From sequence record LR756508.1: a DNA stretch of 64,000 bases. One strand, written 5' to 3'. The translations under genes were made by a program, and so were the position numbers. The notes under the pieces were generated by a model. That model did not search any database. It was given only the letters and a program-made list of their open reading frames with translations, and was not told where the DNA came from. Below, in pieces: positions 11,363 to 37,289 of the stretch; within the stretch, counting starts at the first letter, position 1; the number at the start of each line of letters is the position of its first letter.

Positions 11363-14300
11363 ATGTATAAAAACATCTATATCGAAGATCGCTATACCGA
11401 TCAACCTACCGTTCATATATGGGATTCTCAGAAAGGTCACATTGAGTTCGAATATAATAAAAAAATGTACGTCCGGTCACCCGATGGCGATTATACATCT
11501 CTTTATGGAGACCCTCTAGCAGAAGTTCCAGCCTCAAAAATCGATTATAATACGAAACAAAGGCTGCAGGATCGGTACGGGGAAGGTGAAGCTATATTTC
11601 AATCAGATCTTCAACTTGAAACTCAAATCTTATCGGAGGTCTACAGGGACGCAGAAGAGCCAAGTGAAGATGTAGAGACCCTCTTTTTCGATATTGAGGT
11701 TTCTATGGAGGGAGAACTCCCAAAGATTAGCACTGCGAATAACCCCATCACTTCAATTGCCTACACAGTCCGATCTACAGGCGAATCTAAAGTCTTAATC
11801 TGGGACCCCGAAAACGAAACAGAAAACTTCGAGCAGGAGGGAGTAGAGGTCATACCTTTTGAGGGGGAAGACCAGCTTCTTTATTCTTTTGTTGAAGAAT
11901 GGAGAGATATTGATCCTGATATAATTTCGGGATATAATGTCGATGGTTTTGATGTCCCTTATCTTTACAGGAGAATCAGTAAGGTAATTAACAACGACTT
12001 TGCAGATCGCTTGTCTCCGATTGAAGAAGTAGATTTTCGAAAAAATCGTGGAGAACGTGGCGAAGGTCGGTTTTTTATTGCTGGCGTCAGCTCTCTCGAT
12101 TACTACTCGCTTTATAAAAACTTTACTTTTACTGAGCTCGACTCATATTCTCTCGATAATGTGTCTAAAGAGGAATTAGATCGGGGGAAGGTGGAGTATA
12201 TGGGAAAAGAAATTGAGACCGAGGATGGAGAAACGGTTGTAATCGAAGATCTTGATGATTTGAAAGAATACGACCCTGAAGCCTTCGTTCGATATAATAT
12301 CGAAGATGCATGGCTTGTTAGAGACTTAGACGATAAATTTGACTTCATTGAACTGGCCAGAAAAATTTGTCACTTAGGGCACGTTCCCTATGAGGACATT
12401 TATATGAGTTCAAGATATATCGACGGCGCGTTTATCACGAGGCTTAATAAACGTGGAATTATTGCACCAAACGTTCACAGAATTGAGGATTTTGAATTGG
12501 ATGGATTTCATTCGGTTGGATCAAAAGAGATTAAGCTAAAAAATGAAATCCATCCTGACATTCCAAGAAAAGGAACAATTGGAATCCGAGTTTCCTCAGC
12601 CACGAAGAAAAAGGTAGATTATGATCGGATCGAGAAAGATAAGTTTATTTTAGAAGAACCAGTTGATTTTGAGGTTTTTGAAGATTATTCGATTGGACTT
12701 GAGTTCGAAGGTGCTTACGTAAAAGAACCTGATCCTGGCCTTTACGAATGGATTTACGATCTGGACTTAACCTCCATGTATCCTTCTATTATTATGTCCT
12801 TGAATATTTCTCCCGAAACGTTGGTTGGAAAAATTTATGACTGGAGCGCTGAAGGGTTTATTAAAGGTGAAAAAGAAACGTATAAAGTTTGGATTTTTGA
12901 TGAAGAAGAGTTTTCGGAATTTACTAATTCCGAGTTGGAGAAATTTCTGGAAGAAGGAGAATTTAGTGTAGCCGCAAATGGAGCTTTTTATAGAAATGAT
13001 AAGAAAGGTATTATCCCTGAGGTTCTTGAAGAGTGGTTTACGCTTCGGCAAGAATACAAGTCTACCAGAAACGAGTGGCGTGAAAAAGAAGGAGAAAAGG
13101 CTGAAGAAAAAGCTGAATACTACGATAAACTCCAACACGTCCATAAAATTTTGATTAACTGTTTCACTCCAGGTCATGAAATCGTAACGAAAGATGGAGT
13201 CAAAAATATTGAAGACGTAGAAGAAGGAGATTTTGTTTATTCAGTAGATCCCGAAACTGGCAACGTTCAGTATAAACCAGTTTCAAGAACCTACAGGCAA
13301 GAAAATTATGACGGAAATGTTGTTAACTTCCAGAATTCTTTCGTAGATTTCTCGGTTACGCCAAACCACGATATGGTTTATGGAGGTGACGAGATCTATA
13401 AAGAAAAAGCAGGAAACTGCCTAAATGATTCTGACGAGAGGCGAATGTGGTCACATGGAGCCCTAAGAAAAGACTCGCCAGTTCACGTCAGCCTCAAAAA
13501 TTTCTGTGATCGTTTGGGTGTCGATTACGAATATGACGTTCAAAAAGGCGTAATCAAAAGTTCAGGTACCCAGTCAACCTGGGTTAAAAATACATACCTG
13601 CTTCCTAACTTTCTAAAACTCTGTGGGCAGTATGTGTTTGGAGCGCAGTCTGAACCTGATGGCACCGATAGTGAATCTTACTCTATAGCTACGGAAAACA
13701 ATAAAAAGATTGAGGTCGAAAACACTATACTCCACAAGATACTCAAAGAAGATTTTGGAGAAGAAGCTCAAGATAAAAGAATTCCAGGTTGGATTTGGGA
13801 GTTGGATGGAGTCATTCTAAAAAACCTCTTGGAAACGATCTTTTCTGATGTGGAAAATAGAGACAGCTACCAGTATAAAACTGACCATGAAGAATTCGCG
13901 CAGGATGTAGTAAGACTGGCTTACCATTGTGGCTACAGGGCCGTTGTTGAGAGTCCTGCTAATGAAAATATTAGCTATTATGAAGTGTCAATTTACGAGG
14001 AAGATGGAGAAGTTCCTCCCATTTTAAAAGATAAGGACAGGGAATTAGAAGAGTATGATGGTCCTATCGTTTGTGTTGAGGTGGAAGACAATCATACGGT
14101 CCTGGCAGGAAAAAATGGTAAGTTCAACTTGATTGGCCAGTCGGTTTATGGTATTATGGGGTTGCCAAATTTTCGATTCTACAATGTATATAATGCGTCC
14201 GCCACTACACTTACTGGACAAGCAATTATCAAGTACACACAGAGAATGGGAGATCATTATTATAATAAAAAAATTGGAAAAGACGTTGAGTTTGAAGATG

Positions 14301-14416
14301 AATCTGAGATGAACATTGACTTTAATGAAACCTATTTAGTAATGCGAGATGGGATGAAGATGAAAGTGAAAGGAAAAGAACTTCAAGAGGAAGACGAGCT
14401 TGTAATTGAAGACTAA
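11363..14416 (+). CDS. polB: Family B DNA polymerase, N-terminal part (3'-5' exonuclease, motifs A and B), intein-containing
   Basis: FFDIEV, YNVDGFDVPYL, YNIEDA, DLDLTSMYPSII, KILIN|intein|SVYG. The ORF stops before motif C. Confidence 0.92.
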   Translation: MYKNIYIEDRYTDQPTVHIWDSQKGHIEFEYNKKMYVRSPDGDYTSLYGDPLAEVPASKIDYNTKQRLQDRYGEGEAIFQSDLQLETQILSEVYRDAEEPSEDVETLFFDIEVSMEGELPKISTANNPITSIAYTVRSTGESKVLIWDPENETENFEQEGVEVIPFEGEDQLLYSFVEEWRDIDPDIISGYNVDGFDVPYLYRRISKVINNDFADRLSPIEEVDFRKNRGERGEGRFFIAGVSSLDYYSLYKNFTFTELDSYSLDNVSKEELDRGKVEYMGKEIETEDGETVVIEDLDDLKEYDPEAFVRYNIEDAWLVRDLDDKFDFIELARKICHLGHVPYEDIYMSSRYIDGAFITRLNKRGIIAPNVHRIEDFELDGFHSVGSKEIKLKNEIHPDIPRKGTIGIRVSSATKKKVDYDRIEKDKFILEEPVDFEVFEDYSIGLEFEGAYVKEPDPGLYEWIYDLDLTSMYPSIIMSLNISPETLVGKIYDWSAEGFIKGEKETYKVWIFDEEEFSEFTNSELEKFLEEGEFSVAANGAFYRNDKKGIIPEVLEEWFTLRQEYKSTRNEWREKEGEKAEEKAEYYDKLQHVHKILINCFTPGHEIVTKDGVKNIEDVEEGDFVYSVDPETGNVQYKPVSRTYRQENYDGNVVNFQNSFVDFSVTPNHDMVYGGDEIYKEKAGNCLNDSDERRMWSHGALRKDSPVHVSLKNFCDRLGVDYEYDVQKGVIKSSGTQSTWVKNTYLLPNFLKLCGQYVFGAQSEPDGTDSESYSIATENNKKIEVENTILHKILKEDFGEEAQDKRIPGWIWELDGVILKNLLETIFSDVENRDSYQYKTDHEEFAQDVVRLAYHCGYRAVVESPANENISYYEVSIYEEDGEVPPILKDKDRELEEYDGPIVCVEVEDNHTVLAGKNGKFNLIGQSVYGIMGLPNFRFYNVYNASATTLTGQAIIKYTQRMGDHYYNKKIGKDVEFEDESEMNIDFNETYLVMRDGMKMKVKGKELQEEDELVIED
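13160..14140 (+). mobile_element. Intein 1 in PolB motif B (327 aa, Cys1, ends Gly-Gln, +1 Ser)
   Basis: KILIN|CFTPGHEIVTKDG...VTPNH...VCVEVEDNHTVLAGKNGKFNLIGQ|SVYG; eroded LAGLIDADG-like centre. Confidence 0.88.
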
Positions 14417-16090: not shown

Positions 16091-16486
16091 ATGGTTATGG
16101 AGCACAAAAACTTGATACAAAAAGCGAGGAAAGCGAGAGAAAAAGCGTTTTGTCCATATAGCGAGTATCCAGTTGGAGCCGCTGTAGAGACTAATGAGGA
16201 CGTTTTTACTGGAGCTAACATCGAGGTTTCAGGACGTTCTACTTCGGTCCATGCTGAAATGCTTGCTTTTTTTCAAGCCGTTTATAACGGAGCGGAAGAA
16301 TTTCATAAAATGGCAGTTTCGCCGAAAAATCAGAGCGGAGAAGCGATTTGTGGGCTATGTCAACACACTGTTGCTCAGTTCACAGATGAACTGCTCATAA
16401 TTGAGGACTGTGGAGAAGAAGACCCTGAAACTTACAGATTATCCGAATTGATAGGACCTGCATATAGCCCCTCAACGAGGCATTAA
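16091..16486 (+). CDS. cdd: Cytidine deaminase
   Basis: AFCPYSEYPVGAA, GANIE, VHAE and CGLC zinc motifs. Confidence 0.88.
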   Translation: MVMEHKNLIQKARKAREKAFCPYSEYPVGAAVETNEDVFTGANIEVSGRSTSVHAEMLAFFQAVYNGAEEFHKMAVSPKNQSGEAICGLCQHTVAQFTDELLIIEDCGEEDPETYRLSELIGPAYSPSTRH

Positions 16487-17421: not shown

Positions 17422-19287
17422 ATGAAAACAAAGAAAATTAAAAATATTCCCGAATCAAAACTGAATCAGGACGGAGAAAAAGAATATTGCGTATACACCG
17501 ATTCCTGCCCCGGTTTTGAGCCTATAGTTGTTAAAAGTAAAGAAAGTGGGTTGATTGACGTAAGACTCATATCAGACCTTGAAAACCGTTGGCAGGAGTA
17601 TCTTGTTTGGAGCGATGAAGGTTTTGTAAGAATTAATAATTTTATTAAAAAACCGCTTCGAAAAAACCTCTTCACTGTCAGGACGCAAAGAGGTGTTGTT
17701 CATGTCACTGAGGACCATAGCCTAATCAAATCTTCGGGAGATCCAATAAAACCAAATAAAGTTGAAGTAGGAAACACGGAGCTTTTACACAAAAAAATCG
17801 GCAATTTTGAGCGGAAGACTGAATTTTCAAAAAAACGTGCTTGGTTTTTCGGATTTTTTACTGCAGTAGAAAATAGTAGATGCTCTAATTCCAAAGAAGA
17901 AAATAAAAAGTTAGATGAGGCTTTAAAACAAAAAATTAATGTATCAGCAGAAACCAAAAGGATAGTAGAGTCCGAAAGTTTCACAAAATCTCCTGTATAT
18001 CCAAGATCAGGTTTTGGAAGAGACTTTCCCTCTGGATCTGTAAATCTGTGTTATACAGAAGACAAAAAACTGAAAGTTCCGCCTCAAATTTTAAATGCCA
18101 AAAGAAGTGAAACTATCGAAGCATTTTTGGAAGGCTACAGTGATGGCGACGATCAGATTAATCGAAATTCTTCTAAAAGAAGGTACTGGTTTGATTCTCC
18201 CGTGTTAGCCCAAGGAATTAACCTTTTATTTAATAAATTAGATCAATTAATGGAGGTTGATTATCTAAGAAGTGATGAAAAAGAAAGTATTGGGTTAAGC
18301 AGCCAGGATTCTTGGAAAGAAGAATCAGAAAAAGTAGAGCAAATTGAAGAGTTTGAATACAAGGGAGATTATGTTTACGACTTGGAAACCGAAAACCATC
18401 ATTTTGCCTGTGGAGTAGGCTCCATTGTTGTCCATAACACCGACTCGGTGTTTTATCCAGCAGAGCCGATTGTTGAAAAGCAGATGCCGAATGTAGACAC
18501 CGAAGATGAAGAGGGTATGACCGATGCAATTTTAGAGATTGCAGATGAGGTCGAGGATTATCTTAACGCCTGCTATAACCATTTCGCTAGAGAATTAGCT
18601 CACATTCCTGAAGATAAAAAGCACTGGTTTGAAATTAAACAGGAGCTTGTAGCCAAGTCTGGCCTTTGGGTTCGGAAAAAAAGATATGCCCAGTGGATTA
18701 TCAACGACGAAGGTGATCCAACAGACGAGTTGGACGTGAAAGGGCTTGATATTATCCGCTCCGATTTCCCTACTGCCTTTCGAGAGCTTCTAGAAGATGT
18801 TATTGTTTCGATCCTTAAAGGCTCGGATAAAAAAGAAATAGACAAAAAGGTTCTCGATTTCCGAGAGAATCTTAAAAATTTGAATCTTGAGGACGTGGCG
18901 AGGCCAACTAAAGTAGGAGACCTTGAAGACTACCATACCGATGATTTTGGAAGAACTCAAAAAGGTACTCCCGCTCACTTTGCCGGAGCGTTAAATTACA
19001 ACGACTTGATCAGGCACTTTGGACTTGAAAAAGAAGTTTCTCCTATCAAAAGCGGATCAAAGATCAAGTGGGTTTATTTAAATAAAAACAATCTTGGCTT
19101 CGAGAAGATGGCTTTCAAAGGTCAAGGAAATCCTAAGAAGATAATAGAGTTTTTAAAAGACAATACTGACTTCGTAAAACTTTACGAAAAAAGCCTCAAG
19201 AGTAAAGTTGAAGCTGTTTATGAAGCTATGGACTGGAACTTTCCATCCGAAAACAAACGGCAGGCTCAGAAGTTTTTCAGCATGTGA
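17422..19287 (+). CDS. polB: Family B DNA polymerase, C-terminal part (motif C, thumb), intein-containing
   Basis: YCVYTD|intein|TDSVF gives YTDTDS after splicing; KKRYA, VKGLDIIRSD; C-terminal QAQKFFSM clamp-binding-like tail. Confidence 0.92.
   Translation: MKTKKIKNIPESKLNQDGEKEYCVYTDSCPGFEPIVVKSKESGLIDVRLISDLENRWQEYLVWSDEGFVRINNFIKKPLRKNLFTVRTQRGVVHVTEDHSLIKSSGDPIKPNKVEVGNTELLHKKIGNFERKTEFSKKRAWFFGFFTAVENSRCSNSKEENKKLDEALKQKINVSAETKRIVESESFTKSPVYPRSGFGRDFPSGSVNLCYTEDKKLKVPPQILNAKRSETIEAFLEGYSDGDDQINRNSSKRRYWFDSPVLAQGINLLFNKLDQLMEVDYLRSDEKESIGLSSQDSWKEESEKVEQIEEFEYKGDYVYDLETENHHFACGVGSIVVHNTDSVFYPAEPIVEKQMPNVDTEDEEGMTDAILEIADEVEDYLNACYNHFARELAHIPEDKKHWFEIKQELVAKSGLWVRKKRYAQWIINDEGDPTDELDVKGLDIIRSDFPTAFRELLEDVIVSILKGSDKKEIDKKVLDFRENLKNLNLEDVARPTKVGDLEDYHTDDFGRTQKGTPAHFAGALNYNDLIRHFGLEKEVSPIKSGSKIKWVYLNKNNLGFEKMAFKGQGNPKKIIEFLKDNTDFVKLYEKSLKSKVEAVYEAMDWNFPSENKRQAQKFFSM
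17503..18438 (+). mobile_element. Intein 2 in PolB motif C (312 aa, Ser1, His-Asn end, +1 Thr)
   Basis: YTD|SCPGFEPIVV...VTEDHSL...AFLEGYSDGD...VYDLETENHHF..IVVHN|TDS. Confidence 0.92.
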
Positions 19288-28335: not shown

Positions 28336-29157
28336 ATGTCTAAAAGCAAAAGGACTTCTGATAAATTTTATACGAAAAAAGAAGTAGCCAGGGACCTAAT
28401 CTCTGAGGTTCCACTTGAAAAGTTTGAAAATATAATTGAACCTTCAGCGGGAACTGGTTCTTTTTCCTCTAAAATCGACGGCTGCATAGCCATCGACACC
28501 GATCCCCAGTCTAAAGAGATAAAAAAACAAGATTTTTTTGACTTTGAGTTTCATGGAGATCCTTCTAACACAATAGTGCTCGGCAACCCACCTTTTGGTA
28601 GGCAGGGCAGTAAAGCCCTCTCATTTATAAGAAAAGCTTCAGAAATCGCCGATGCCATAGGATTTATTTTGCCTAAGTCTTTTAAAAAAGATTCAATGAA
28701 AAGGAAGGTTCCCGACCATTTCCACGTCCAAAAAGAAATTGACCTTCCAGAAAAAAGTTTTGTTTACAGAGGCGAAGACCATGAGGTTCCTGTCGTGTTT
28801 CAACTCTGGATCAGAGAGGACGTGCCGAGGTTGAAGTATGGAGAGAACGAGCCCCTCGGCTATACCTTTTTAAAAACCCCCAAATATGCAGATTTCACAG
28901 TTCGAAGGGTTGGGGTGCATGCTGGTGAGGCCAGCCTTACTTCTCTCGATAAATCCCCACAAAGCCACTATTTTTTGCGCTTAGACAAACGAATAAAGTC
29001 AAAGAGGGCAAAAATTGTCAAGAGTCTTAACCAAACCGAGTTTCCATCCGCAGAAGATACTTCTGGCCCAAATTCAATTTCAAAAGGTGAGTTTATCTGC
29101 AAGTTAAATCCTATTATTGAGGAAATGTCTGATCTAAGTGAACTTAGATTTTGGTAA
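28336..29157 (+). CDS. N6-adenine DNA methyltransferase (motif I before motif IV)
   Basis: DKFYTK, IIEPSAGTGSF, VLGNPPFG, FILPKSF. Confidence 0.88.
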   Translation: MSKSKRTSDKFYTKKEVARDLISEVPLEKFENIIEPSAGTGSFSSKIDGCIAIDTDPQSKEIKKQDFFDFEFHGDPSNTIVLGNPPFGRQGSKALSFIRKASEIADAIGFILPKSFKKDSMKRKVPDHFHVQKEIDLPEKSFVYRGEDHEVPVVFQLWIREDVPRLKYGENEPLGYTFLKTPKYADFTVRRVGVHAGEASLTSLDKSPQSHYFLRLDKRIKSKRAKIVKSLNQTEFPSAEDTSGPNSISKGEFICKLNPIIEEMSDLSELRFW

Positions 29158-29186
29158 GCGAGCTATTAGCATCAAAAATATAACTC

Positions 29187-30020
29187 ATGAAGTTTGATAA
29201 CTGCGTTGGAAATCCTCCTTACAATTATCCAAAAATTGGCGGAAAATCAAGCGGAAATGTGTTGTGGCCCGATTTTGTGAAGCGAGGCATCGACAACCAA
29301 CTTTCAAGTCGTGGCTCACTTACTTTCGTCCATCCATCAATTTGGAGAAAACCTGTTGATAGAAACAGCGACGTTCGGCTATGGAATAAGCTTTCCAATA
29401 ATCTAGTTTACTTGAATATAAACGACTCCAAAACAGGTCAAAAAGTTTTTGGGGCCAACACGAAGTTCGATTGGTACGTTTGGAAAGATGGTTATAGCGG
29501 ACTGGCTACTGTAAACGATGAAAATGGAAACAAAATCGAGATTAACTTATCGGAGTGGAGCTTTCTTCCTAACTCTCATTTTAAGTTAATTCAAACGTTA
29601 ATTGCTGGTTCCAACGACAAAAAACAAAAGGTCATATTTGATTCTTCCTACCATGCTTCCCGAACGTTCGTGACCGACAAAAAAGATCTCGCCCACTGTT
29701 ATCCTGTCGTTCATTCTACTGCAGGAGGACGAAATATCAAATATTCGGATCGTCAAGACCGGGGCCATTTTGGAATTCCAAAGCTAATTATTGGAGAAAG
29801 TGGAATCGGTGATCCAATTCTCGATGTGAAAGGTGAATATGGAATGACACAGGGGGCAATGGGCCTTCAAATCGGGAGTGAAAAGGAAGGTGAAAAAATG
29901 CTTGAGGTACTTCAGTCCGAAAAAATGTCCAAGATATTAAATGCCTGCCAGTGGAGTGGGTTTAGAATTGATGCGAGGCTTTTCCATCAGTTTAAAAAAG
30001 ACTGGTATGATAGCCTGTAG
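29187..30020 (+). CDS. N6-adenine MTase C-terminal half (motif IV plus TRD; no motif I)
   Basis: Starts MKFDNCVGNPPY; LWPDFV, FVHPSIW; no FxGxG-type SAM motif. Confidence 0.75.
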   Translation: MKFDNCVGNPPYNYPKIGGKSSGNVLWPDFVKRGIDNQLSSRGSLTFVHPSIWRKPVDRNSDVRLWNKLSNNLVYLNINDSKTGQKVFGANTKFDWYVWKDGYSGLATVNDENGNKIEINLSEWSFLPNSHFKLIQTLIAGSNDKKQKVIFDSSYHASRTFVTDKKDLAHCYPVVHSTAGGRNIKYSDRQDRGHFGIPKLIIGESGIGDPILDVKGEYGMTQGAMGLQIGSEKEGEKMLEVLQSEKMSKILNACQWSGFRIDARLFHQFKKDWYDSL

Positions 30021-30188
30021 TTCATTTTTATTTTCTTTTCTTTTTGCCGTTTCTAAACATATGCAGCGTAAGAATAAAATACCTAAGACTGCATTTCAGA
30101 TAAAAAAATAGTCGGAAGACGGGGATAGGAAAATAAGTTTGATCAGCATTATAACTTTTCTGCATTTTAATTACTTGCTTCGCTAATC

Positions 30189-30959
30189 ATGGAAACGGTT
30201 AATAAGAGAATAAAACTTGGAGAAGATGATATCGAGAGATTCATGGAGGAGTTTAAAAAAAGAGTCGAAGATTTTCATTCCACCCTTCGGGTTTCTCCAA
30301 TAGGCGAACATTTCGAAGACCTGGTTCACCAGGCATTTGTCCGAGCTGAAATTCCTGGAGTGAGATGGGATGGGCTCGATCACAAATCTGGAGCAGATTT
30401 GTTTTTCGACCAGGAGCTTTCACTTCCATTCGATTGGGCAGAAAAGCCCCTCAAAGCTCCTTCCGTAAAAACAAACGTGAAGAGGCAGCAAGACCCCATT
30501 CGCTCAGACATATCTGGAGAGAGGCTTGGAAATATGATGATGGGAGAAGATAAAGATACGGCTTTAAAAGAGGTCTTAAATCTGTTAGCGAATAAAGTGA
30601 ACTATAACTACTACATCCTCCTTACGAGGCGAACCCAGCGAGGAAAAGATTATAACCGAAAGGCTTTAAGAGGAGAAGGTTTTGAAGAATACGAAGTTTT
30701 CCTCATTCCTGCTTCCTACTTCCACCAATTCCTGTATCCAGTTAGTAAGTGGACTCACACCTCAAAAAAGTGGAAAAGAAAGATAGAGAAAGGTTTCAAC
30801 CTGGTTATCACGAAAAGTATGGCGCATCAATATTGGATACAGGGAGTGCCGTACAATGACATTAAAAAATACTCTCTGGGTTCTGTGGAAATCTCACATA
30901 CTTCTATTCTTGATGAACGGTATCCTGCTGAAGATATTGCCAAAAGAAAAGTGCAATAA
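30189..30959 (+). CDS. Putative PD-(D/E)xK restriction-endonuclease-like protein
   Basis: GEHFEDLV...DHKSGADLF...PSVK; lies between MTase halves. Confidence 0.4.
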   Translation: METVNKRIKLGEDDIERFMEEFKKRVEDFHSTLRVSPIGEHFEDLVHQAFVRAEIPGVRWDGLDHKSGADLFFDQELSLPFDWAEKPLKAPSVKTNVKRQQDPIRSDISGERLGNMMMGEDKDTALKEVLNLLANKVNYNYYILLTRRTQRGKDYNRKALRGEGFEEYEVFLIPASYFHQFLYPVSKWTHTSKKWKRKIEKGFNLVITKSMAHQYWIQGVPYNDIKKYSLGSVEISHTSILDERYPAEDIAKRKVQ

Positions 30960-30994
30960 TCAATATCAGCGTAAAATCTCAAAAAACGGTTATT

Positions 30995-31570
30995 ATGAGA
31001 GATCCATATAAAATATTAGAAAACGCTCGGAAAAAGATGGAAGATTATGTGGTGAGCCAACAATCAAGAGATCAGCATGCTGAGGTACATACGCCCTTCG
31101 GACTGATTTCTAACATGCTTTCGCAAATTCCAGAAGAAGAGTGGGATTCGCCTGAAAAAACTTGGTACGATTCATCTGCAGGGATTGCTAATTTCACCGT
31201 TGTTGTAGCAGAAAAGCTTATGGAATCTCTAAAAGATGAATTTTCAGATTCAAAAGAAAGGTACCGTCATATAATGGAAAAACAGATCTACATGGCCGAG
31301 CTTCAAATAAAAAATGTAGTAAAAGCCGGAGAATTATTAAACCCATCTGGAGAACTCAATCTCAACATCAAATGTGTTGATTCCTTGGAGCTTCAAACTG
31401 AATACATGGAACCATCTGACTGGAACCAGCACAGGTTTCGGACGCACTACAAAACAAGCGATTTCTTTAATTATGAACCAAAACCAGAAGAGTTTGAGAA
31501 ACTAGAAAAAGTAAAAGAACTTACCGATAACGAAGAAATTATCGAGAACTTTGAGAAAGGATATAAATAG
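30995..31570 (+). CDS. N6-adenine MTase N-terminal half (motifs X, I-III; no motif IV)
   Basis: AEVHTP, WYDSSAGIANF, QIYMAEL, NIKCVDSL; no NPPY. Confidence 0.72.
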   Translation: MRDPYKILENARKKMEDYVVSQQSRDQHAEVHTPFGLISNMLSQIPEEEWDSPEKTWYDSSAGIANFTVVVAEKLMESLKDEFSDSKERYRHIMEKQIYMAELQIKNVVKAGELLNPSGELNLNIKCVDSLELQTEYMEPSDWNQHRFRTHYKTSDFFNYEPKPEEFEKLEKVKELTDNEEIIENFEKGYK

Positions 31571-31600
31571 ATTTTCTAAAAGGTTTTATTTTTTTAAGAC

Positions 31601-34600
31601 ATGAGCGATTTTCGAAAACAGCTCACTGATTTCCCAATTCAGACCGTAAACATTGGAGACTTCAATCCAAGTGAAGATCAAGTCCGAGACGACGATCATC
31701 TCCTTCTTTATATTACTGAGGTTGAAGGTCCTGATGGAAAGACACATTTTAAGTTCGGCACCACAGAACGTACAAACAGAAGTGGTGAGGTTCGGGGAAA
31801 TTATGCCCGAGAATTATTTCAAGATCGGCTTAATGGGTATTCTACTGAATTACTTCCTAGAAGAACTCTTAGCGGTCTATTCATTCTTCCTCGTTACTAT
31901 AAAGGTGTCCGCTGGACCGACACTAGAATTGGAAATAAGATCTTTAAGGGTCTTCTTGGACTTCAAGAATCTAACAGGTTTCCGCATGCCACCGAGATTG
32001 TAACTAATACGACTATCGAAGAGCTTAAAGATACATTAGTTGAGCAGTTCGGAGGGAGTAAGAAAAAAAGTATTTACAACGATGGGGGATTTCACGATTA
32101 CCAGAAACAAGTTATTGAAAATATATATGGGGCGGTCAAAAAGAGAGTAGAGAATGGGAATAGCGAATCGCTTGATATTTTAGAATACCTGGCCGCACGG
32201 TTTGGAAAAAACCGAACCTTCCTAAAAACAATCAAAGACCTCTGGCAAGATTTCGGCTACGGAGCTTTTATCATTTCTCCATACTGGCTTTCGGTTCATA
32301 ACGGATTTGAACAGTTGATTCGAGAATACCGAGAGTTTGATGACTTTGTTTTTATAGATGCCAGGCCAGATGGCGACAAGAAGTGGGAGGATCGGCTTGA
32401 ATGGGCTTATAAAAACGACGACGTATTTCCCGTTGTTGCCGTAAGCTTGGTGAAAGGTGAAGATTCAAAAAGTGACATTCAAAAAATTACCTACGTTCCT
32501 AAAGATGAGCGTATAACACTAATCGATGAGGCGGATTACGGTGCTCATACTGAAAATAGCGGGAAACTAATAGACTATATTGAAGGCACTGAGCACGCCT
32601 ATAGCTGGGGTCCGAAGCCCGGAGATTCAGTTGCACTTAACATGAAAACAACGGGTTCTGGCCTGGAAAAAATGGCGAAGTATGACATAGATTGGGATAA
32701 AGTTAAATCGATTCCATATCTTGAGCTTGTTCGCCAGAAGAATAATGGGAATCAAAGCCTGCAACACGTCGTTGATCCAATTCTTCGTAGTTGGAATGCT
32801 GAGGATACGCTCGCTGATGAATTGAAGCGGCATTTCCCCCAAGAACAAATCCCATCACTCTACCAGCTTGCACAAAAAGCAGATCAAAACGAACACATCT
32901 GGAGGAAAATTTTTCGAGTCGTTTTCTCTGACTATCCTGACGGAGAATACGGCCCTGCTTCGGGTATGAATGTGGTCAATGAGGCCGTAGAGTCTATTTC
33001 AAACTTCAACAAAGCAAAAGATGGCCTGGGAGTCATGGCGAAAATGCCGTCTGTGAGTAAAGAAAGTCTACTTGCGATAGAAAAGGCAGCCGAAGAGGCA
33101 CTTGACGATTGGGCTGTAATGACCCTCTGTGGGCGAGTTTATGATGAAAACTCAAATGTCGTCTATGAAGGGACAACCAACGTTGAAGCAGAAGATAAGG
33201 TCAAGGGATTTTTGAAAGAAGAGTATGATCCCAAAAAACACGAGCGTGGCGTGCTTATCTTGACTATGGGCATGGGGTTTCGGAGCTTCACGGTTCCTGA
33301 CATTTCAGTCGTTGCTAATTTTTCAGACGGCGGGGAAGCCTCGACAATTGTGCAGGCCGCAAGTAGAGCTTTTTCCCCAAGATACATCAAGTATTTAAGC
33401 GAGGGAGACGAAAAGCAGTTAAAAGAAAAAAATGAGGCGATGTTCGCCGATTACGGCTTCGATCAGTCAAAAACAAAAGATGCCATTACGAAGTTTCTAG
33501 CGCAAAATCTTTTCGCCGAACGGGATTCGGATCGCTCCGACGGCGAATCGATTGGAGAGACGTGGAGACGGATTTATCCTTCGGTGGACGTGATGAAATA
33601 CATGGGAGAAAACCGGAGATTTGGAGAATTAGAACCGAGCAATCTTCTAAGTGAGATTACCGATACAAAGAAGTTTAGCGAAAGAGGCGCTTATAACACG
33701 AACACAAATCCTGCGTACAGATTTGACTCAATTCGAAGAATTTTCGGAAAAGCCAAAAGTCTTGATATATCCAAACATTTTGATGGAAATGTCAATATCG
33801 ATGCTGGAAGTTCAAGCGTAGGTGATCAGAACACTGAAAACCCTGGCGATGATGAAAATGATCTTGACAGCGAAGAACTTGCAGAAAAATCTGCACTTCT
33901 TCGAGGAATGGGATTCACTCTACCTATTTTTGCAGGCGATGAAAACTCAATTTTTGATGCCATCGATAAAATTAAAATGGAAGAAGAACTTCGCGAAGAT
34001 TGGATTAGCCTTTGTGGGATAACCCCTGAAGAGTATAAAAAGCTTCTTCTTCCCACAGAGAACGGAAATACGGTAATGCCTGTTGATGAAATAAGTCTGG
34101 TTTTTCATACCAGAAAAGATACACCTGAAAAAGCGTTGAGGGGAGTTCTAAAGGCAAACCGGCTTTTTGAAATTCCAGACGAAATGATAGAGGAAATGTT
34201 GATTTATGAAGACATTTCTCCCACCGATAAAATTGCTATCATTGACGCTGCAGGACCTAAACTGCTTAAAGAACTTCCAGCGTACTGCAGTGATGAAAAT
34301 ATTATGGTTTTCACTCGATTTCACCTCTTAAAACGACATATTAAAAAAGAATTTCCAAATATCCACGTCAAAGTTGTAGATGTTAAAGATGATGAAAGTA
34401 TTGATGATGCCTACAAAAGAAAAATGAACGAAACTGACATGGACTTCGATTCTGCTATTGGAAATCCACCTTATCATAAAGATGACGATGGACATGGTGC
34501 TTCTTCTACTACAGTTTACGATGATTTCGTAAAACTATCCCAAAGGCTAGCAGAAAAAACTTGTCTTGTAGTTCCTGCTCGCTGGTTCATAGGGGGAAAG

Positions 34601-35368
34601 GGACTCTCGGACTTTCGTAACTGGATGCTTCAAAGAGATGATATAGAAAGTATTCAGTATTGGAATAAAGATAACAATCCTTTCAAAAATACTAAAATTT
34701 CTGGAGGCGTCTGCGTAATATACACAAACAAGAATAAGGATTCTGATAAGGTTCTGCTTAATGGAACTGAAATTAAATTGGACCGATATGACATCATTGT
34801 CTCGGATACCGAGTCGTATCCAATCATCGATTCTGTCCGTGAAAACTCAGACCGTTTTTTGAATGAAATATATGTTCCCTCATCCTTTTCTGGAATTAGT
34901 CCGAGTGATGATGAGTTGTGTGATTCTAAAAAAACCGATAGACACATTCCCTGCTATACTTTTCAACAGGGTGGTTTCAAGCGCTGGGTAGACTTTAAAG
35001 AAACAAAAAATATGAGGAGGGGGGGAGATCAACTTCACGTTCTTACCGTCGAAGCGAATGGAGATGAAACCGATGGGTTCGGAAATACTTTTATCGCTAA
35101 AAGAAACGAAACATTTAGTAAAACCTACATCGGGTTTGAAGTTAGCTCACTGAGAAAGGCGGTGAGTCTTCGGACTTATCTAAACACTAAGTTTGCGAAC
35201 CATATGCTTCGCCTCAGAAAAATTAGCCAGCATATTTCAAGAAAAACTACAAAGTGGGTTCCTATTCCATCTCTTGACCGAATTTGGACAGATGAAGAAC
35301 TAAGAAAGGGGGGGTTTTTTGGTCTTTCAGGTGATCAATGGGACTATATTTTGGAAACTGGTTCTTGA
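31601..35368 (+). CDS. Nuclease-SF2 helicase-N6 MTase-TRD fusion (Type ISP/IIG-like)
   Basis: N-terminal LLYITE..FKFGTT (GIY-YIG/T5orf172-like); ARFGKN, LIDEADYG, QAASR; FDSAIGNPPY, VVPARW, Eco57I-like TRD tail. Confidence 0.7.
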   Translation: MSDFRKQLTDFPIQTVNIGDFNPSEDQVRDDDHLLLYITEVEGPDGKTHFKFGTTERTNRSGEVRGNYARELFQDRLNGYSTELLPRRTLSGLFILPRYYKGVRWTDTRIGNKIFKGLLGLQESNRFPHATEIVTNTTIEELKDTLVEQFGGSKKKSIYNDGGFHDYQKQVIENIYGAVKKRVENGNSESLDILEYLAARFGKNRTFLKTIKDLWQDFGYGAFIISPYWLSVHNGFEQLIREYREFDDFVFIDARPDGDKKWEDRLEWAYKNDDVFPVVAVSLVKGEDSKSDIQKITYVPKDERITLIDEADYGAHTENSGKLIDYIEGTEHAYSWGPKPGDSVALNMKTTGSGLEKMAKYDIDWDKVKSIPYLELVRQKNNGNQSLQHVVDPILRSWNAEDTLADELKRHFPQEQIPSLYQLAQKADQNEHIWRKIFRVVFSDYPDGEYGPASGMNVVNEAVESISNFNKAKDGLGVMAKMPSVSKESLLAIEKAAEEALDDWAVMTLCGRVYDENSNVVYEGTTNVEAEDKVKGFLKEEYDPKKHERGVLILTMGMGFRSFTVPDISVVANFSDGGEASTIVQAASRAFSPRYIKYLSEGDEKQLKEKNEAMFADYGFDQSKTKDAITKFLAQNLFAERDSDRSDGESIGETWRRIYPSVDVMKYMGENRRFGELEPSNLLSEITDTKKFSERGAYNTNTNPAYRFDSIRRIFGKAKSLDISKHFDGNVNIDAGSSSVGDQNTENPGDDENDLDSEELAEKSALLRGMGFTLPIFAGDENSIFDAIDKIKMEEELREDWISLCGITPEEYKKLLLPTENGNTVMPVDEISLVFHTRKDTPEKALRGVLKANRLFEIPDEMIEEMLIYEDISPTDKIAIIDAAGPKLLKELPAYCSDENIMVFTRFHLLKRHIKKEFPNIHVKVVDVKDDESIDDAYKRKMNETDMDFDSAIGNPPYHKDDDGHGASSTTVYDDFVKLSQRLAEKTCLVVPARWFIGGKGLSDFRNWMLQRDDIESIQYWNKDNNPFKNTKISGGVCVIYTNKNKDSDKVLLNGTEIKLDRYDIIVSDTESYPIIDSVRENSDRFLNEIYVPSSFSGISPSDDELCDSKKTDRHIPCYTFQQGGFKRWVDFKETKNMRRGGDQLHVLTVEANGDETDGFGNTFIAKRNETFSKTYIGFEVSSLRKAVSLRTYLNTKFANHMLRLRKISQHISRKTTKWVPIPSLDRIWTDEELRKGGFFGLSGDQWDYILETGS

Positions 35369-35435: not shown

Positions 35436-37289
35436 ATGGTTAATGTTGAGCAGGGAGATGTAAAAGAGGTTTTATCAGGTAAAGAAGAGCACACTTTTGA
35501 TTCGGTTGTTACCGATCCTCCTTATGAGCTTGGTTTCATGGGGAAAAAATGGGATGATAGTGGCATAGCGTTTGATAGGAAGATGTGGTCGGAGGTTTAC
35601 AGGACCATGAAACCCGGCGCTTGGGTCTGCGCTTTTTCTGGCACACGGACCCACCACAGAATGATGGAGGCCATGGATGACGTGGGGTTTGACATGTATG
35701 GCATTTTGATGTGGGTTTACGGGTGTTTGAGTGAGGACACTGAGATATTAACAGAAGACGGGTGGAAGGATCTATACGAATATGATAGCGAAAAGGTGGC
35801 TTGCTGGGATAGTAATAAAAATGAAATACGGCTGTCTTCTATCCATAATAAGTTTGTTTATGAGCACGGTGGGGACATGATCCGCCTCCAAAACTGCTAT
35901 ACAGATCAGCTTCTCACTCCCAATCATCGCGTCTATTATAGAAAAGAACACAAAAACAAAAAAGACCAGTTAAGTAAACAATTTAAGTCAAAAGACTGGC
36001 GTATTGAGCAAGCTCAAAATCTAATAAATGGAGAAACTTTAAACCTTCCGTTATCTTCCTATCATGATGGTGAAGGTATCGGTGGAACACAATATGCTCA
36101 GCTATCAGCCTATTTTTATGCCAGCGGTAAAATTGATGAGGAAAGTAGTAGGGTGAGAATCGTCCAAAACTCTGAAAATCGAGAGCATATAAACCGCCTT
36201 GATAATCTTTTAGAAAAATTAAGAATTAATTTTGAAAAAAAGAAGGGTAAAAATCAACATGAAATTATTTGGCTTATTAAAAAGTCAGAAAATTTGAAAA
36301 AGAGTTTTAATGAAAAAACTCCAGGGTGGAACCTATTATGGAACATGACATTAGAAGAAAAGGAGGTATTTCTTGAAACTACAGTAAATTTAAACGAAAA
36401 TATAACACAGAATCTACATCAAAAAGAACGGAAGAACTGGTTCCAGGCATTATTACACTGTATTGGAAAAGAAGGTATTAACGTTGGAGAAAACGACTTT
36501 CAGTTGAATCTCCATTCGAATTCAACCACTCAAGTTGAGCCTAATAAACAAAGGCGAGTTAAAAATTATAGTGGAAAAGTCTGGTGCGTTGAAACTTCCA
36601 CAGGTGCTTTTATGGCGAGAAGAAACGGAAAAGTGTTTATTACGGGAAACAGTGGGTTTCCAAAAAACCATGACGTTTCCAAAGCTATTGACAAAGAGCT
36701 TGGAAAATACGACGAGCGTGAAGTAGTTGGAAAAAAGTCAACCAAAATCCATTTAGAAAATTTAGGCGATGCTGGATACGGTGAAGAATGGGAAGTAACA
36801 GAGCCATACACCGACGAGGCAAAAAAGTGGGAAGGATGGGGAACTGCTTTAAAGCCTGCCTATGAACCGATAGCACTGGCTAGAAAAAAAGGTGATAGAG
36901 TTAATCCTGATCTCTCGAAGGGTTCCAGATTTTTCTACTGTCCCAAGGCAAAAAGATCAGAGCGAAATATTGGGTGCGAAGACAATGAGCATCCTACGGT
37001 GAAACCTATAGAACTCATTTCTTATCTGGTCCGGTTAATCACTCCTCAAGATGGGAAGGTCCTAGATCCTTTTGTTGGAAGTGGCTCCACTGCTATAAGC
37101 GCAGTATTAGAAAACCGTAGTGGACTCGGGATTGAGTTAGATGAAGAAAGCCACTCCCTCGCTTCTAAAAGAGTAGAGTACGTTAAGAACAACCTGATAC
37201 AAGTCTATGACCAAATTTATAACGATCCTAGTAACAACATAACTAAAAAACAAGCCTCGACAATCGAGCACGGCTTCTGGAGCGAGTGA
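35436..37289 (+). CDS. Beta-class DNA methyltransferase A (intein-containing)
   Basis: VVTDPPYELGFMG, HPTVKP, VLDPFVGSGST. Confidence 0.92.
   Translation: MVNVEQGDVKEVLSGKEEHTFDSVVTDPPYELGFMGKKWDDSGIAFDRKMWSEVYRTMKPGAWVCAFSGTRTHHRMMEAMDDVGFDMYGILMWVYGCLSEDTEILTEDGWKDLYEYDSEKVACWDSNKNEIRLSSIHNKFVYEHGGDMIRLQNCYTDQLLTPNHRVYYRKEHKNKKDQLSKQFKSKDWRIEQAQNLINGETLNLPLSSYHDGEGIGGTQYAQLSAYFYASGKIDEESSRVRIVQNSENREHINRLDNLLEKLRINFEKKKGKNQHEIIWLIKKSENLKKSFNEKTPGWNLLWNMTLEEKEVFLETTVNLNENITQNLHQKERKNWFQALLHCIGKEGINVGENDFQLNLHSNSTTQVEPNKQRRVKNYSGKVWCVETSTGAFMARRNGKVFITGNSGFPKNHDVSKAIDKELGKYDEREVVGKKSTKIHLENLGDAGYGEEWEVTEPYTDEAKKWEGWGTALKPAYEPIALARKKGDRVNPDLSKGSRFFYCPKAKRSERNIGCEDNEHPTVKPIELISYLVRLITPQDGKVLDPFVGSGSTAISAVLENRSGLGIELDEESHSLASKRVEYVKNNLIQVYDQIYNDPSNNITKKQASTIEHGFWSE
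35724..36650 (+). mobile_element. Intein in MTase A (309 aa, Cys1, Gly-Asn end, +1 Ser)
   Basis: WVYG|CLSEDTEILTEDGW...LTPNH...VWCVETSTGAFMARRNGKVFITGN|SGFPK; degenerate LAGLIDADG-like centre (SAYFYASG). Confidence 0.92.

What the first reader, a model, noticed from the sequence alone, without database searches (positions are those of the whole stretch)
29187..31570. An N6-adenine MTase split into two separately encoded, order-swapped halves around a nuclease-like gene
Seen: 30995-31570 has only motifs X and I-III (EVHTP, DSSAGIANF, NIKCVDSL). 29187-30020 begins exactly where such enzymes continue (MKFDNCVGNPPY plus TRD). The C-half lies upstream of the N-half, so this is not a simple frameshift. 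A PD-(D/E)xK-like ORF (30189-30959) sits between them. Known: two-polypeptide MTases are described mainly for m5C enzymes such as M.AquI. Inference: one SAM-binding subunit may pair with interchangeable catalytic/specificity subunits, including the MTase end of the 31601 fusion whose own motif I is eroded.
Basis: partly seen in the sequence, partly recalled or inferred. Interest (0 to 1): 0.65.

Follow-up and report, generated by a model that had tools for sequence, protein, structure and literature searches.

The report
Naturally split phage DNA adenine methylase
A 484-kb phage from a salt-crust metagenome encodes the cofactor-binding half and the catalytic, DNA-reading half of one DNA adenine methyltransferase as two separate conserved genes on either side of a restriction-enzyme-like gene. 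Related phages put the same small cofactor half next to one or two different catalytic halves, which suggests a modular two-subunit methylase I found no description of for this enzyme class.

Summary
ORF 30995-31570 (191 aa) holds only motifs X and I-III of a gamma-class amino-methyltransferase. ORF 29187-30020 (277 aa) starts at the strand before NPPY and carries the rest of the enzyme plus a TaqI-like target-recognition domain. Together they tile one unsplit 450-aa relative, with the break between motifs III and IV.

They are not pseudogenes. Relatives keep the lengths down to 47-55% identity, dN/dS is 0.06-0.11, and the C-half / middle ORF / N-half order holds in all related loci.

The 484-kb record has exactly one N-half-like sequence. 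It has two Eco57I-type catalytic modules (C-half and helicase fusion 31601-35368), neither with a recognisable SAM half.

The pattern extends beyond this clade:
- Dozens of clusters of stand-alone N-halves exist, mostly viral.
- Several loci have one N-half beside one or two C-halves that all begin at "M-K-F-D-x-x-x-G-N-P-P-Y".
- Stand-alone N-halves cluster in their tree, whereas C-halves are closest to different unsplit enzymes.

The middle ORF is weakly ThaI/SmaI-like.

No physical complex or methylation was tested; the complex predictor was unavailable. My verdict is a probable two-subunit methylase and a new variant of a known kind. A shared SAM subunit is plausible but unproven.

The parts
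29187..30020 (+). C-half subunit (277 aa). It begins at strand beta4 with NPPY (motif IV, nt 29211-29222) and continues through motifs V-VIII and a TaqI/BseCI/CamA-like target-recognition domain. It has no motifs X or I-III.
   Evidence: AF2 model pLDDT 91 aligned to M.TaqI 97-408 at Z 13.7. dN/dS 0.08-0.10.
30189..30959 (+). Middle ORF (256 aa), a candidate ThaI/SmaI-like PD-(D/E)xK endonuclease. Invariant residues are E40, E43, D44, D70 and S92-V-K94. It is found only in this huge-phage clade and is always between the two halves.
   Evidence: No Pfam, PHROG, NCBIfam, PADLOC or PDB sequence hit. Conserved in all clade loci, 35% identical in L004. dN/dS 0.03-0.05. AF2 pLDDT 65. VIA best hit is ThaI 3ndh_B at Z 6.5, with many restriction enzymes below it. 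The ESM Atlas gives 0.95 and 0.94 to clusters partly labelled SmaI and ThaI.
30995..31570 (+). N-half subunit (191 aa). It carries motif X (nt 31082-31096), motif I (31169-31195), the motif II acid E102 and the motif III D129. A clade-conserved ~50-aa C-terminal tail (nt 31415-31567) is absent from unsplit relatives.
   Evidence: It is the only N-half-like sequence in the 484-kb record. dN/dS 0.06-0.11.
34439..35368 (+). Methyltransferase end (from M947-DFDSAIGNPPY) of the 1255-aa helicase fusion 31601-35368. This is a possible second client of the N-half. The ~100 residues before NPPY show no detectable homology to N-halves.
   Evidence: Pfam Eco57I E 3e-14 at residues 926-1026. No N-half HMM hit, whereas the L006 ortholog has one. 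hhalign probability ~1%. Its gene starts 30 nt after the N-half gene.

Best explanation
ORFs 30995-31570 and 29187-30020 encode the two halves of one gamma-class (TaqI / BseCI / CamA / Eco57I-type) DNA amino-methyltransferase, most likely N6-adenine. The enzyme has been split inside its Rossmann-like catalytic domain, between motif III (strand 3) and motif IV (strand 4, NPPY).

The small subunit supplies the AdoMet pocket: motif X, the motif I loop, the motif II acid and the motif III Asp. The large subunit supplies the NPPY catalytic loop, strands 4-7 and the DNA-recognition domain.

Inferred mechanism: the two polypeptides assemble non-covalently, with strand 1 pairing against strand 4 to rebuild the seven-stranded sheet. 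Only the heterodimer then binds cofactor next to the flipped base and methylates DNA. The clade-specific conserved tail of the small subunit probably clamps the partner.

The pair travels with a restriction-endonuclease-like gene as a three-gene cassette, probably a Type II R-M-like or homing module that the split methylase protects against.

The small subunit belongs to a phage-wide family of stand-alone SAM halves that sit beside diverse catalytic halves. It may therefore also serve the neighbouring helicase-methylase fusion, which has lost its own SAM half.

Shown: complementarity of sequence and fold, purifying selection, synteny, family-wide recurrence. Inferred: assembly, activity, sharing, role of the middle gene.
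For: 1. Tiling. The N-half covers residues 32-164 and the C-half covers residues 170-443 of the unsplit relative P0021.

2. Fold. The C-half model (pLDDT 91) matches M.TaqI 97-408, BseCI 125-531 and CamA 157-532 over its whole length at Z 13-14.

3. Selection. N-half homologs are 182-194 aa down to 47% identity, and C-half homologs are 276-290 aa down to 55%. dN/dS is 0.06-0.11 with synonymous sites near saturation.

4. Synteny. The order C-half / Mid / N-half is kept in L004-L007, L009-L011 and L013-L014 (L012 is a short contig that begins inside the Mid gene), even where extra genes are inserted (L005, L006). It is also kept where the cassette sits inside a split DNA polB without the fusion next to it (L004).

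5. Need. The whole 484-kb record has one N-half-like sequence and two Eco57I catalytic modules.

6. Recurrence.
- About 30 of the top 150 representative clusters in the 1.8-billion-protein search are stand-alone N-halves.
- The nearest Atlas clusters are short, 94-100% viral 'N-6 methylase' proteins.
- C-halves starting at M-K-F-D...NPPY lie next to N-halves in L025, L041 (two), L043, L047 (two), L094, L117 and L121.

7. Modularity.
- The nearest kin of the window N-half are other split N-halves (155-100 bits, against 87 or fewer for any unsplit enzyme).
- The nearest kin of the C-half outside its clade are unsplit enzymes (219-172 bits, against 118 for L041 C1 and 34 bits or fewer for the L041 C2, L047 and L121 C-halves; the L043, L025 and L094 C-halves gave no hit).
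- The split/fused label needs 5 changes on the N-domain tree, against a shuffled mean of 31.

8. Precedent. C5 methylases are known to work as two polypeptides and as complementing fragments (PMC3404938, PMC5944983).
Against:
- The window's motif I is DSSAGIANF, whereas most relatives have DPCxGIGNF, so AdoMet binding could be weakened in this copy.
- In many other loci the gene next to a stand-alone N-half still has ~100-270 residues before NPPY, with motif X kept and the glycine loop lost (L015, L016, L034, L045, S-SKS1, ACG-2014f). Simple fold complementation does not explain those cases.
- Five stand-alone N-halves have no NPPY gene within 5 kb (L044, L048, L049, L124, L125).
- No natural single-chain C->N fusion was found that would act as a Rosetta stone.
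- No RNA data are available.
Confidence: 0.66

Rival explanations
1. The two ORFs are decaying remnants of rearranged methyltransferase genes and have no function.
For: Phage genomes carry many MTase fragments. The window's motif I is slightly off consensus. Some stand-alone N-halves elsewhere have no visible partner.
Against: dN/dS is 0.06-0.11 for both halves at near-saturated dS. Lengths are conserved to 47-55% identity. Catalytic and cofactor residues are invariant. Synteny is kept across all clade loci.
Confidence: 0.03
2. The N-half's real partner is the helicase-methylase fusion immediately downstream (31601-35368), which has lost its own SAM half. The upstream C-half ORF does something else, for example methylation-independent DNA binding, or it is served only incidentally.
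For: - The N-half gene ends 30 nt before the fusion gene in the window and in L005-L007 and L009-L014.
- The fusion's pre-NPPY region has no detectable N-half homology.
- L041's second C-half is of the fusion's subtype (SRWFAGG) and follows an N-half.
- ACG-2014f and L015 link N-halves to the module of nuclease-like protein, helicase and phrog_3689 MTase.
Against: - L004 keeps C-half, Mid and N-half together with no fusion in the 12 kb read.
- L006 and L007 keep the stand-alone N-half although their fusion has an intact N-half of its own.
- The C-half has no cofactor half at all, keeps NPPY, and is under purifying selection as strong as that on the N-half.
Confidence: 0.12
3. The middle ORF is a free-standing homing endonuclease or otherwise unrelated mobile gene that happens to lie between the halves. 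It is not a restriction partner of the split methylase, and the gene order has no functional meaning.
For: - The region is full of mobile elements: a GIY-YIG gene inserted in L005, inteins in polB and in the 35436 MTase, and the cassette inside a polB break in L004.
- I-Ssp6803I, a PD-(D/E)xK homing enzyme, is among the weak fold hits at Z 4.1.
- Split N/C pairs elsewhere have no Mid homolog.
Against: Mid is present in every locus of the clade, always between the halves, and has the lowest dN/dS of the three (0.03-0.05). Typical homing genes are sporadic. The best fold and language-model leads are Type II restriction enzymes, ThaI and SmaI.
Confidence: 0.3
4. The halves act independently. The N-half is a small AdoMet-binding protein, for example a cofactor sponge or regulator, and the C-half is a DNA-binding protein without methyl transfer.
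For: Stand-alone N-halves sometimes occur without an NPPY neighbour, or next to MTases that still have an N-region.
Against: A three-strand half of a Rossmann sheet is unlikely to be stable or to bind AdoMet alone (inference from the class I MTase fold). NPPY and the surrounding catalytic residues are invariant in the C-halves. N and C genes co-occur and often overlap.
Confidence: 0.06

Closest known systems
M.AquI and M.EcoHK31I (natural two-polypeptide C5-cytosine DNA methyltransferases)
   Same: One DNA methyltransferase is made from two separately translated polypeptides encoded close together, and both are presumably needed (PMC3404938, PMC5944983).
   Different: Those are C5 enzymes. They are cut between motif VIII and the variable region or TRD (AquI), or carry only motif IX on the small subunit (EcoHK31I), so the cut falls between or beside domains. 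Here an NPPY amino-methyltransferase is cut inside the catalytic Rossmann domain, between motifs III and IV. The small subunit is the whole cofactor site. The halves are order-swapped around a third gene. The small subunit also forms a family of its own that sits beside diverse partners.
Monomeric gamma-class N6-adenine methyltransferases M.TaqI, M.BseCI and CamA (Pfam Eco57I PF07669 / N6_Mtase PF02384)
   Same: The motifs are the same (X, I-III on the N-half; NPPY, V-VIII and TRD on the C-half). The C-half model superposes on TaqI 97-408, BseCI 125-531 and CamA 157-532 at Z 13-14. The profile of the family hits CamA at E 1e-11.
   Different: Those are single chains. Here the first ~96 residues (TaqI numbering) are a separate gene product with an added conserved 50-aa tail.
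[quoted passage not shown]
   Same: The window's gene order (IV-VIII and TRD first, then X and I-III) copies the beta-class motif order. Halves existing as independent polypeptides are what the fission-and-fusion model predicts (PMC3320104). Proteins with two tandem N-halves (P0052, P0057, P0060) look like duplication intermediates.
   Different: No single-chain C->N fusion of this family was found. The sequences belong to the gamma Eco57I/N6_Mtase families, not to beta-class N6_N4_Mtase. Gene order varies among loci.
Engineered split methyltransferases (bisected M.HhaI, M.SssI, M.BspRI/M.BsuRI fragment complementation)
   Same: Inactive fragments of a monomeric DNA MTase reassemble into an active enzyme in the cell (PMC3404938, PMC2836561).
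   Different: Those are artificial C5 enzymes cut at other sites. This would be a natural adenine-type example that selection has maintained.
Type I R-M HsdM/HsdS and Type IIB/IIG systems (specificity on a separate or swappable module)
   Same: One module is reused with exchangeable DNA-recognition modules. The fusion's MTase end hits a Type IIG PADLOC model at E 2e-18.
   Different: In Type I systems the complete catalytic domain (SAM site plus NPPY) is on HsdM and only the TRDs are separate. Here the exchangeable unit carries the catalytic loop and the TRD, and the constant unit carries only the cofactor site.

Membership tests
Gamma-class DNA amino-methyltransferase (Eco57I/TaqI type) | Catalytic motif IV (N/D/S)PP(Y/F) at the end of strand 4 | tested here: met
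   NPPY at C-half residues 9-12. P10 is invariant and N9 and P11 nearly invariant across 28 relatives.
Gamma-class DNA amino-methyltransferase (Eco57I/TaqI type) | AdoMet-binding motifs X, I, II, III present | tested here: met
   They are present on the separate N-half: EVHTP, DSSAGIANF, E102, D129. E30, T33, D59 and G63 are invariant in 15 stand-alone N-halves and E102 is nearly invariant. The window's motif I is slightly off the relatives' DPCxGIGNF.
Gamma-class DNA amino-methyltransferase (Eco57I/TaqI type) | All motifs in the order X, I-VIII, TRD on one polypeptide | tested here: not met
   There are two ORFs 975 nt apart, with the C-part upstream and a third gene between them. Unsplit relatives such as P0021 do meet this feature.
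Gamma-class DNA amino-methyltransferase (Eco57I/TaqI type) | TaqI-like fold of strands 4-7 plus a C-terminal TRD | tested here: met
   The AF2 model (pLDDT 91) matches M.TaqI 97-408 at Z 13.7 (rmsd 3.9, 256 aligned), BseCI at Z 14.0 and CamA at Z 13.3.
Gamma-class DNA amino-methyltransferase (Eco57I/TaqI type) | AdoMet-dependent methylation of adenine N6 in a specific DNA sequence | not testable with these tools
   This needs expression and methylome sequencing.
Natural two-subunit DNA methyltransferases (M.AquI / M.EcoHK31I kind) | Two separately encoded polypeptides that together carry the full motif set | tested here: met
   The two ORFs tile onto P0021 with no overlap and a 5-residue gap.
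Natural two-subunit DNA methyltransferases (M.AquI / M.EcoHK31I kind) | C5-cytosine chemistry, with the break after motif VIII or within the variable region | tested here: not met
   This is an NPPY amino-MTase and the break lies between motifs III and IV. The AquI and EcoHK31I layout is taken from PMC3404938.
Natural two-subunit DNA methyltransferases (M.AquI / M.EcoHK31I kind) | Both subunits physically associate and are required for activity | not tested
There are no wet-lab data.
Beta-class permuted amino-methyltransferase | A single chain with the order IV-VIII, TRD, X, I-III, and membership of N6_N4_Mtase (PF01555) | tested here: not met
   The gene order mimics it, but these are separate genes and the hits are PF07669/PF02384-type, not PF01555. 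No C->N single-chain relative is among the top hits.
Type II restriction-modification cassette | A PD-(D/E)xK restriction endonuclease encoded next to its cognate methyltransferase | tested here: inconclusive
   Fold hits for Mid are ThaI at Z 6.5 and EcoRV, HhaI, NaeI, DpnI and others at Z 3-4.6, on a model with pLDDT 65. The Atlas gives 0.95 and 0.94 to clusters partly labelled SmaI and ThaI. Foldseek and all sequence libraries give nothing. A candidate D70...S92-x-K94 motif comes from inspection only.
Type II restriction-modification cassette | Endonuclease activity blocked by the cognate methylation | not testable with these tools
   This needs toxicity and rescue assays and cleavage assays.

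The most novel reading that the evidence does not exclude
Tailed phages carry a generic, trans-acting AdoMet-binding subunit: a half Rossmann fold with motifs X and I-III. It plugs into several different catalytic and target-recognition subunits that begin at strand 4 (NPPY). One cofactor subunit would then arm two or more methylases of different specificity in the same phage. In this window those would be the 277-aa C-half and the methylase end of the 1255-aa helicase fusion. New specificities would be acquired by swapping C-halves cut out of ordinary single-chain enzymes at a pre-existing internal Met.
Probability: 0.3. Interest if true: 0.8.

Novelty: new variant of a known kind. Interest (0 to 1): 0.64.

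Why it matters
Natural DNA methyltransferases made of two polypeptides are known as rare C5 curiosities. The held literature did not yield an amino-methyltransferase cut through its catalytic Rossmann domain.

If the halves assemble, three things follow:
- The AdoMet site and the catalytic/recognition half of a class I methyltransferase can evolve as separate, exchangeable genes.
- Living examples become available of the independent half-enzymes that the fission-and-fusion and permutation-by-duplication models of methyltransferase class evolution invoke.
- Annotation of many short phage 'N-6 methylase' or 'hypothetical' ORFs (phrog_4376 and relatives), and of N-terminally 'truncated' Eco57I-like ORFs, would change from fragments to subunits.

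It would also supply naturally optimised split adenine methylases for proximity-dependent or targeted methylation tools. Finally, it would affect methylome predictions for huge phages, in which several specificities might depend on one small gene.

Tried and rejected
- Middle ORF by sequence: no Pfam, PHROG, NCBIfam, PADLOC or PDB hit, also when every clade member was scanned. Foldseek against the PDB gave nothing with E below 0.3. Only the exhaustive VIA search and the Atlas gave leads.
- BLASTP of the middle ORF against cyanophage gp052 (Mrr-like) showed no similarity, so the two 'nuclease-like' neighbours are not homologous.
- Rosetta-stone search: I looked for single-chain C-half-then-N-half proteins among top hits where the N-half lies near the C-terminus. 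All were contig-truncated N->NPPY proteins or N-terminal extensions.
- hhalign of the fusion's 125 residues before NPPY against the N-half profile showed no homology.
- An early idea that C->N order is the rule (from IMG/VR loci) was dropped after L041, L043 and L047 showed N->C.
- I considered a reading in which C and N are joined by frameshifting or bypass. I rejected it for the window because a 771-nt conserved gene lies between them.
- PDB sequence search with the unsplit relative P0021 alone found nothing. The family profile was needed.
- The genome search 'own' failed because no genome is held. I searched the public record through a locus handle instead.
- Sequencing runs: only the probable source DNA run (halite metagenome) holds the stretch and there is no RNA run.
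- Bujnicki 2002 on MTase permutations is not held.
- Five literature searches found no natural split N6-adenine DNA methylase. This is absence in the held library, not proof.
Full report
SOURCE AND LAYOUT. The window is identical to positions ~248-312 kb of LR756508.1, an unannotated 484-kb 'uncultured phage' assembly. The only public run that holds the stretch is a halite metagenome. All genes around the finding lie on the + strand:
- 28336-29157: a complete small MTase (phrog_5172; motif I EPSAGTGSF, motif IV NPPF).
- 29187-30020: the 'C-half', 277 aa.
- 30189-30959: 'Mid', 256 aa.
- 30995-31570: the 'N-half', 191 aa.
- 31601-35368: a 1255-aa fusion whose last ~310 residues are an Eco57I-type MTase.
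- 35436-37289: an N6_N4 MTase interrupted by a LAGLIDADG intein.

No terminator-like site separates the three genes, and none of them has a Shine-Dalgarno sequence.

The N-half carries motif X (EVHTP), motif I (DSSAGIANF), the motif II acid (E102) and motif III (CVDSL), and nothing after that. It matches phrog_4376 and the methyltransferase family phrog_21201.

The C-half starts MKFDNCVGNPPY. It matches only the back part of its families: Eco57I positions 73-171 of 171 and phrog_3689 positions 66-315 of 348.

The clearest test is the unsplit 450-aa relative P0021. Its residues 32-164 align to N-half 1-140 (E 8e-15). Its residues 170-443 align to C-half 2-274 (41% identity, E 1e-72). The two ORFs therefore tile one enzyme, with the break in the short linker between motif III and motif IV.

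The AF2 model of the C-half is confident (pLDDT 91, pTM 0.85). It superposes over its whole length on M.BseCI 125-531 (Z 14.0), M.TaqI 97-408 (Z 13.7) and CamA 157-532 (Z 13.3). In TaqI numbering, the product lacks exactly the first ~96 residues, which form the cofactor site. This last point rests on established knowledge of M.TaqI, whose NPPY is at 105-108.

NOT PSEUDOGENES.
- The word search found N-half homologs of 182-194 aa from 90% down to 47% identity.
- C-half homologs of 276-290 aa run from 84% down to 55% identity. Below that level come unsplit enzymes of 395-477 aa.
- Contigs carrying these proteins keep the order C-half, Mid, N-half.
- Nei-Gojobori dN/dS is 0.08-0.10 for the C-half, 0.06-0.11 for the N-half and 0.03-0.05 for Mid, with dS near or beyond saturation.
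- Most N-half relatives have the canonical DPCxGIGNF. The window and its closest relative have DSSAGIANF, a mild departure.
- The N-half also has a ~50-residue C-terminal tail with many invariant aromatic and acidic positions. Unsplit relatives lack it. I read it as an assembly element, which is an inference.

THE CASSETTE MOVES AS A UNIT.
- In the most distant relative (L004) the three genes, preceded by a 64-codon ORF, sit between two pieces of a family-B DNA polymerase gene, and no helicase fusion is nearby.
- The window's own polB is broken at the same point but holds other genes there.
- In L005 a GIY-YIG homing gene and a small sigma70_r4-like ORF are inserted between Mid and the N-half.
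- In L006 and L007 an extra N6_N4 MTase is inserted between Mid and the N-half.

The halves stay linked through all of this.

WHAT THE MIDDLE GENE IS. Sequence libraries give nothing. Its AF2 model is mediocre (pLDDT 65, pTM 0.69) and Foldseek finds nothing.

The exhaustive VIA search puts the ThaI restriction endonuclease first (3ndh_B, Z 6.5, 152 residues aligned). Below it come EcoRV, HhaI, NaeI, I-Ssp6803I, DpnI, NlaIV, BcnI, HinP1I, BglI, MutH, Ecl18kI, Sau3AI, PvuII and Hjc, at Z 2.6-4.6. By the tool's own caution, Z below 8 is not proof.

Independently, the language-model Atlas places Mid at 0.95 and 0.94 next to clusters partly labelled SmaI and ThaI. Invariant residues (E40, E43, D44; D70; S92-V-K94) fit a PD...SxK variant of the nuclease motif. 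The comparison with Cfr10I-type sites is from memory and is only a lead.

I conclude that Mid is probably a restriction-type PD-(D/E)xK nuclease. Whether it is a restriction partner or a homing enzyme remains open.

THE GENOME NEEDS THE N-HALF. I searched the whole 484-kb record with the N-half profile and found one match, the 30995 ORF. A search with Pfam Eco57I found two, the C-half and the fusion.

The fusion's ~100 residues before NPPY are not hit by the N-half profile, and hhalign sees no homology. In contrast, the corresponding fusion in L006 and L007, and about 45 other long (roughly 950-1900 aa) fusion proteins in the metagenome loci, carry a clear N-half directly before the catalytic part. 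The replacement segment (…IDAAG…) is itself conserved among L005, L009, L011 and L013.

A FAMILY-WIDE PATTERN.
- The N-half family first appeared as small 'hypothetical' genes in cyanophages S-SKS1 and ACG-2014f.
- A profile search of 1.8 billion representatives gave 5326 hits. About 30 of the best 150 are short stand-alone proteins.
- The nearest Atlas clusters are 138-226-aa proteins, three of the four 94-100% viral and the nearest mostly bacterial (Rhodothermota).

Scans of IMG/VR and of JGI metagenomes, analysed with profiles of my own and supplemented by two contig look-ups, show the following arrangements:
(a) C-halves that begin within a few residues of NPPY, next to an N-half: L025 and L094 (C then N, overlapping or 5 nt apart), L043 (N, a 709-aa gene, C), L117 (convergent) and L121 (C, C, N).
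(b) One N-half followed by two C-halves that both start at NPPY: L041 and L047. The second C-half in L041 is of the fusion's subtype.
(c) N-halves directly after MTase genes that still have 100-270 residues before NPPY but have lost the glycine loop: L015, L016, L034, L045 and S-SKS1. ACG-2014f has the order N-half, Mrr-like gene, MTase, helicase.
(d) Five orphans without an NPPY gene within 5 kb.

Gene order is therefore variable, and the window's swapped order is one of several. The start M-K-F-D-x-x-x-G-N-P-P-Y recurs. The same Met is present internally in many unsplit relatives, which gives a ready-made start codon at the domain break (inference).

MODULARITY. By BLASTP the window's N-half is closer to other split N-halves than to the N-region of any unsplit enzyme. 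L041, L043 and L047 score 155, 101 and 100 bits, against 87 or fewer for unsplit enzymes.

The window's C-half behaves the opposite way. Outside its clade it is closest to unsplit enzymes (219-172 bits). It is far from the C-halves that accompany those related N-halves (118 bits for L041 C1, 34 bits or fewer for the L041 C2, L047 and L121 C-halves, and no reported hit for those of L043, L025 and L094).

On a tree of 114 N-domains the split/fused label needs 5 changes, against a shuffled mean of 31 (0 of 500 shuffles as low). Starred branches do not exclude a single origin. The tree is short and poorly resolved, and near-copies inflate the clustering.

This is the pattern expected if a stand-alone cofactor subunit persists while catalytic and specificity partners are replaced.

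MECHANISM. In class I methyltransferases the sheet order is 3-2-1-4-5-7-6, which is established knowledge. A cut between strands 3 and 4 therefore separates two sub-domains that meet along strands 1 and 4. The cofactor lies on the first sub-domain and the NPPY loop on the second.

I propose that the two products assemble along that seam and that only the heterodimer is active. C5 enzymes are known to tolerate natural and engineered bisection (PMC3404938, PMC5944983). Independent half-proteins are what the fission-and-fusion route to permuted classes predicts (PMC3320104).

The steps that are shown are sequence and fold complementarity, selection, linkage and recurrence. The steps that are inferred are assembly, activity, target base, sharing with the fusion, and the role of Mid.

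WHAT IS KNOWN. Five full-text searches found natural two-polypeptide DNA methylases only among C5 enzymes, and found engineered splits. I found no description of a natural amino-methyltransferase split between motifs III and IV, or of a shared cofactor subunit. The library is incomplete, so this is not proof of novelty. I rate the finding a new variant of a known kind.

LIMITS.
- The partners with a retained degenerate N-region are not explained by simple complementation.
- The nuclease assignment is weak.

Noticed in passing
window 11363-14416 and 17422-19287: The family-B DNA polymerase is encoded in two genes about 3 kb apart. The first carries a Hint/intein-like insert from about residue 598. 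The second begins with an intein-splicing-like region (residues 59-339) before the polymerase C-part. Four ORFs lie between them, including a dCMP deaminase at 16091-16486. In L004 the same break point holds the C-half/Mid/N-half cassette instead.
   Followed up: partly
window 35436-37289: An N6_N4-type (DPPY) DNA methyltransferase is interrupted by a LAGLIDADG-type intein or homing-endonuclease insert at about residues 100-400. With 28336-29157, the split pair and the fusion, the window holds at least four methylase systems within 9 kb.
   Followed up: no
L005:2080-3399: A GIY-YIG (LEM-3 type) homing gene and a sigma70_r4-like ORF are inserted just upstream of the N-half. That N-half (P0010) is a mosaic. 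By eye on the alignment, its first ~100 residues are only ~45% identical to the window's and its last ~90 residues ~88% identical, as expected from co-conversion next to a homing gene.
   Followed up: partly
L041:435-2247 and L047:1013-3249: One stand-alone N-half gene is followed by two consecutive C-half genes that each start at M-K-F-D...NPPY. In L047 the two are paralogs. In L041 they are of different subtypes, and the second resembles the window fusion's methylase end.
   Followed up: partly
P0052, P0057, P0060: These single proteins have two tandem N-half domains followed by one NPPY catalytic part. They are possible duplication intermediates of the kind the permutation-by-duplication model predicts.
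   Followed up: no
window 31601-35368; L015:2641-6405; L002:2929-6210: The same gene set appears in three forms. It consists of a nuclease-like domain, an SF2 helicase, a phrog_3689-type methylase without a glycine loop, and a stand-alone N-half. It is one fusion plus an N-half in the window, four separate genes in L015, and N-half/Mrr-like/MTase/helicase in cyanophage ACG-2014f. The layout recalls Type ISP/IIG enzymes and P1 DarB (resemblance from memory). I did not characterise the fusion's N-terminal ~150 residues.
   Followed up: partly
window 29150-29186, 30160-30188, 30960-30994, 31571-31600: None of the four genes has a Shine-Dalgarno sequence, and the upstream regions are A/T-rich. The source is a halite metagenome, and the closest cellular hit to the N-half is on a Salinibacter MAG contig (L124). 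The Atlas names Rhodothermota as the commonest phylum in the nearest cluster. This is consistent with a Salinibacter-like (Rhodothermota) host.
   Followed up: no
L001:1590-3327, L034:232-2266, L033:35-1112, L004:5196-7276: Where the N-half gene overlaps the gene before it, the overlaps are unusually long (17-35 nt). In the cases I checked by hand, the N-half frame is +1 relative to the upstream gene. I did not test whether this reflects translational coupling or chance.
   Followed up: no
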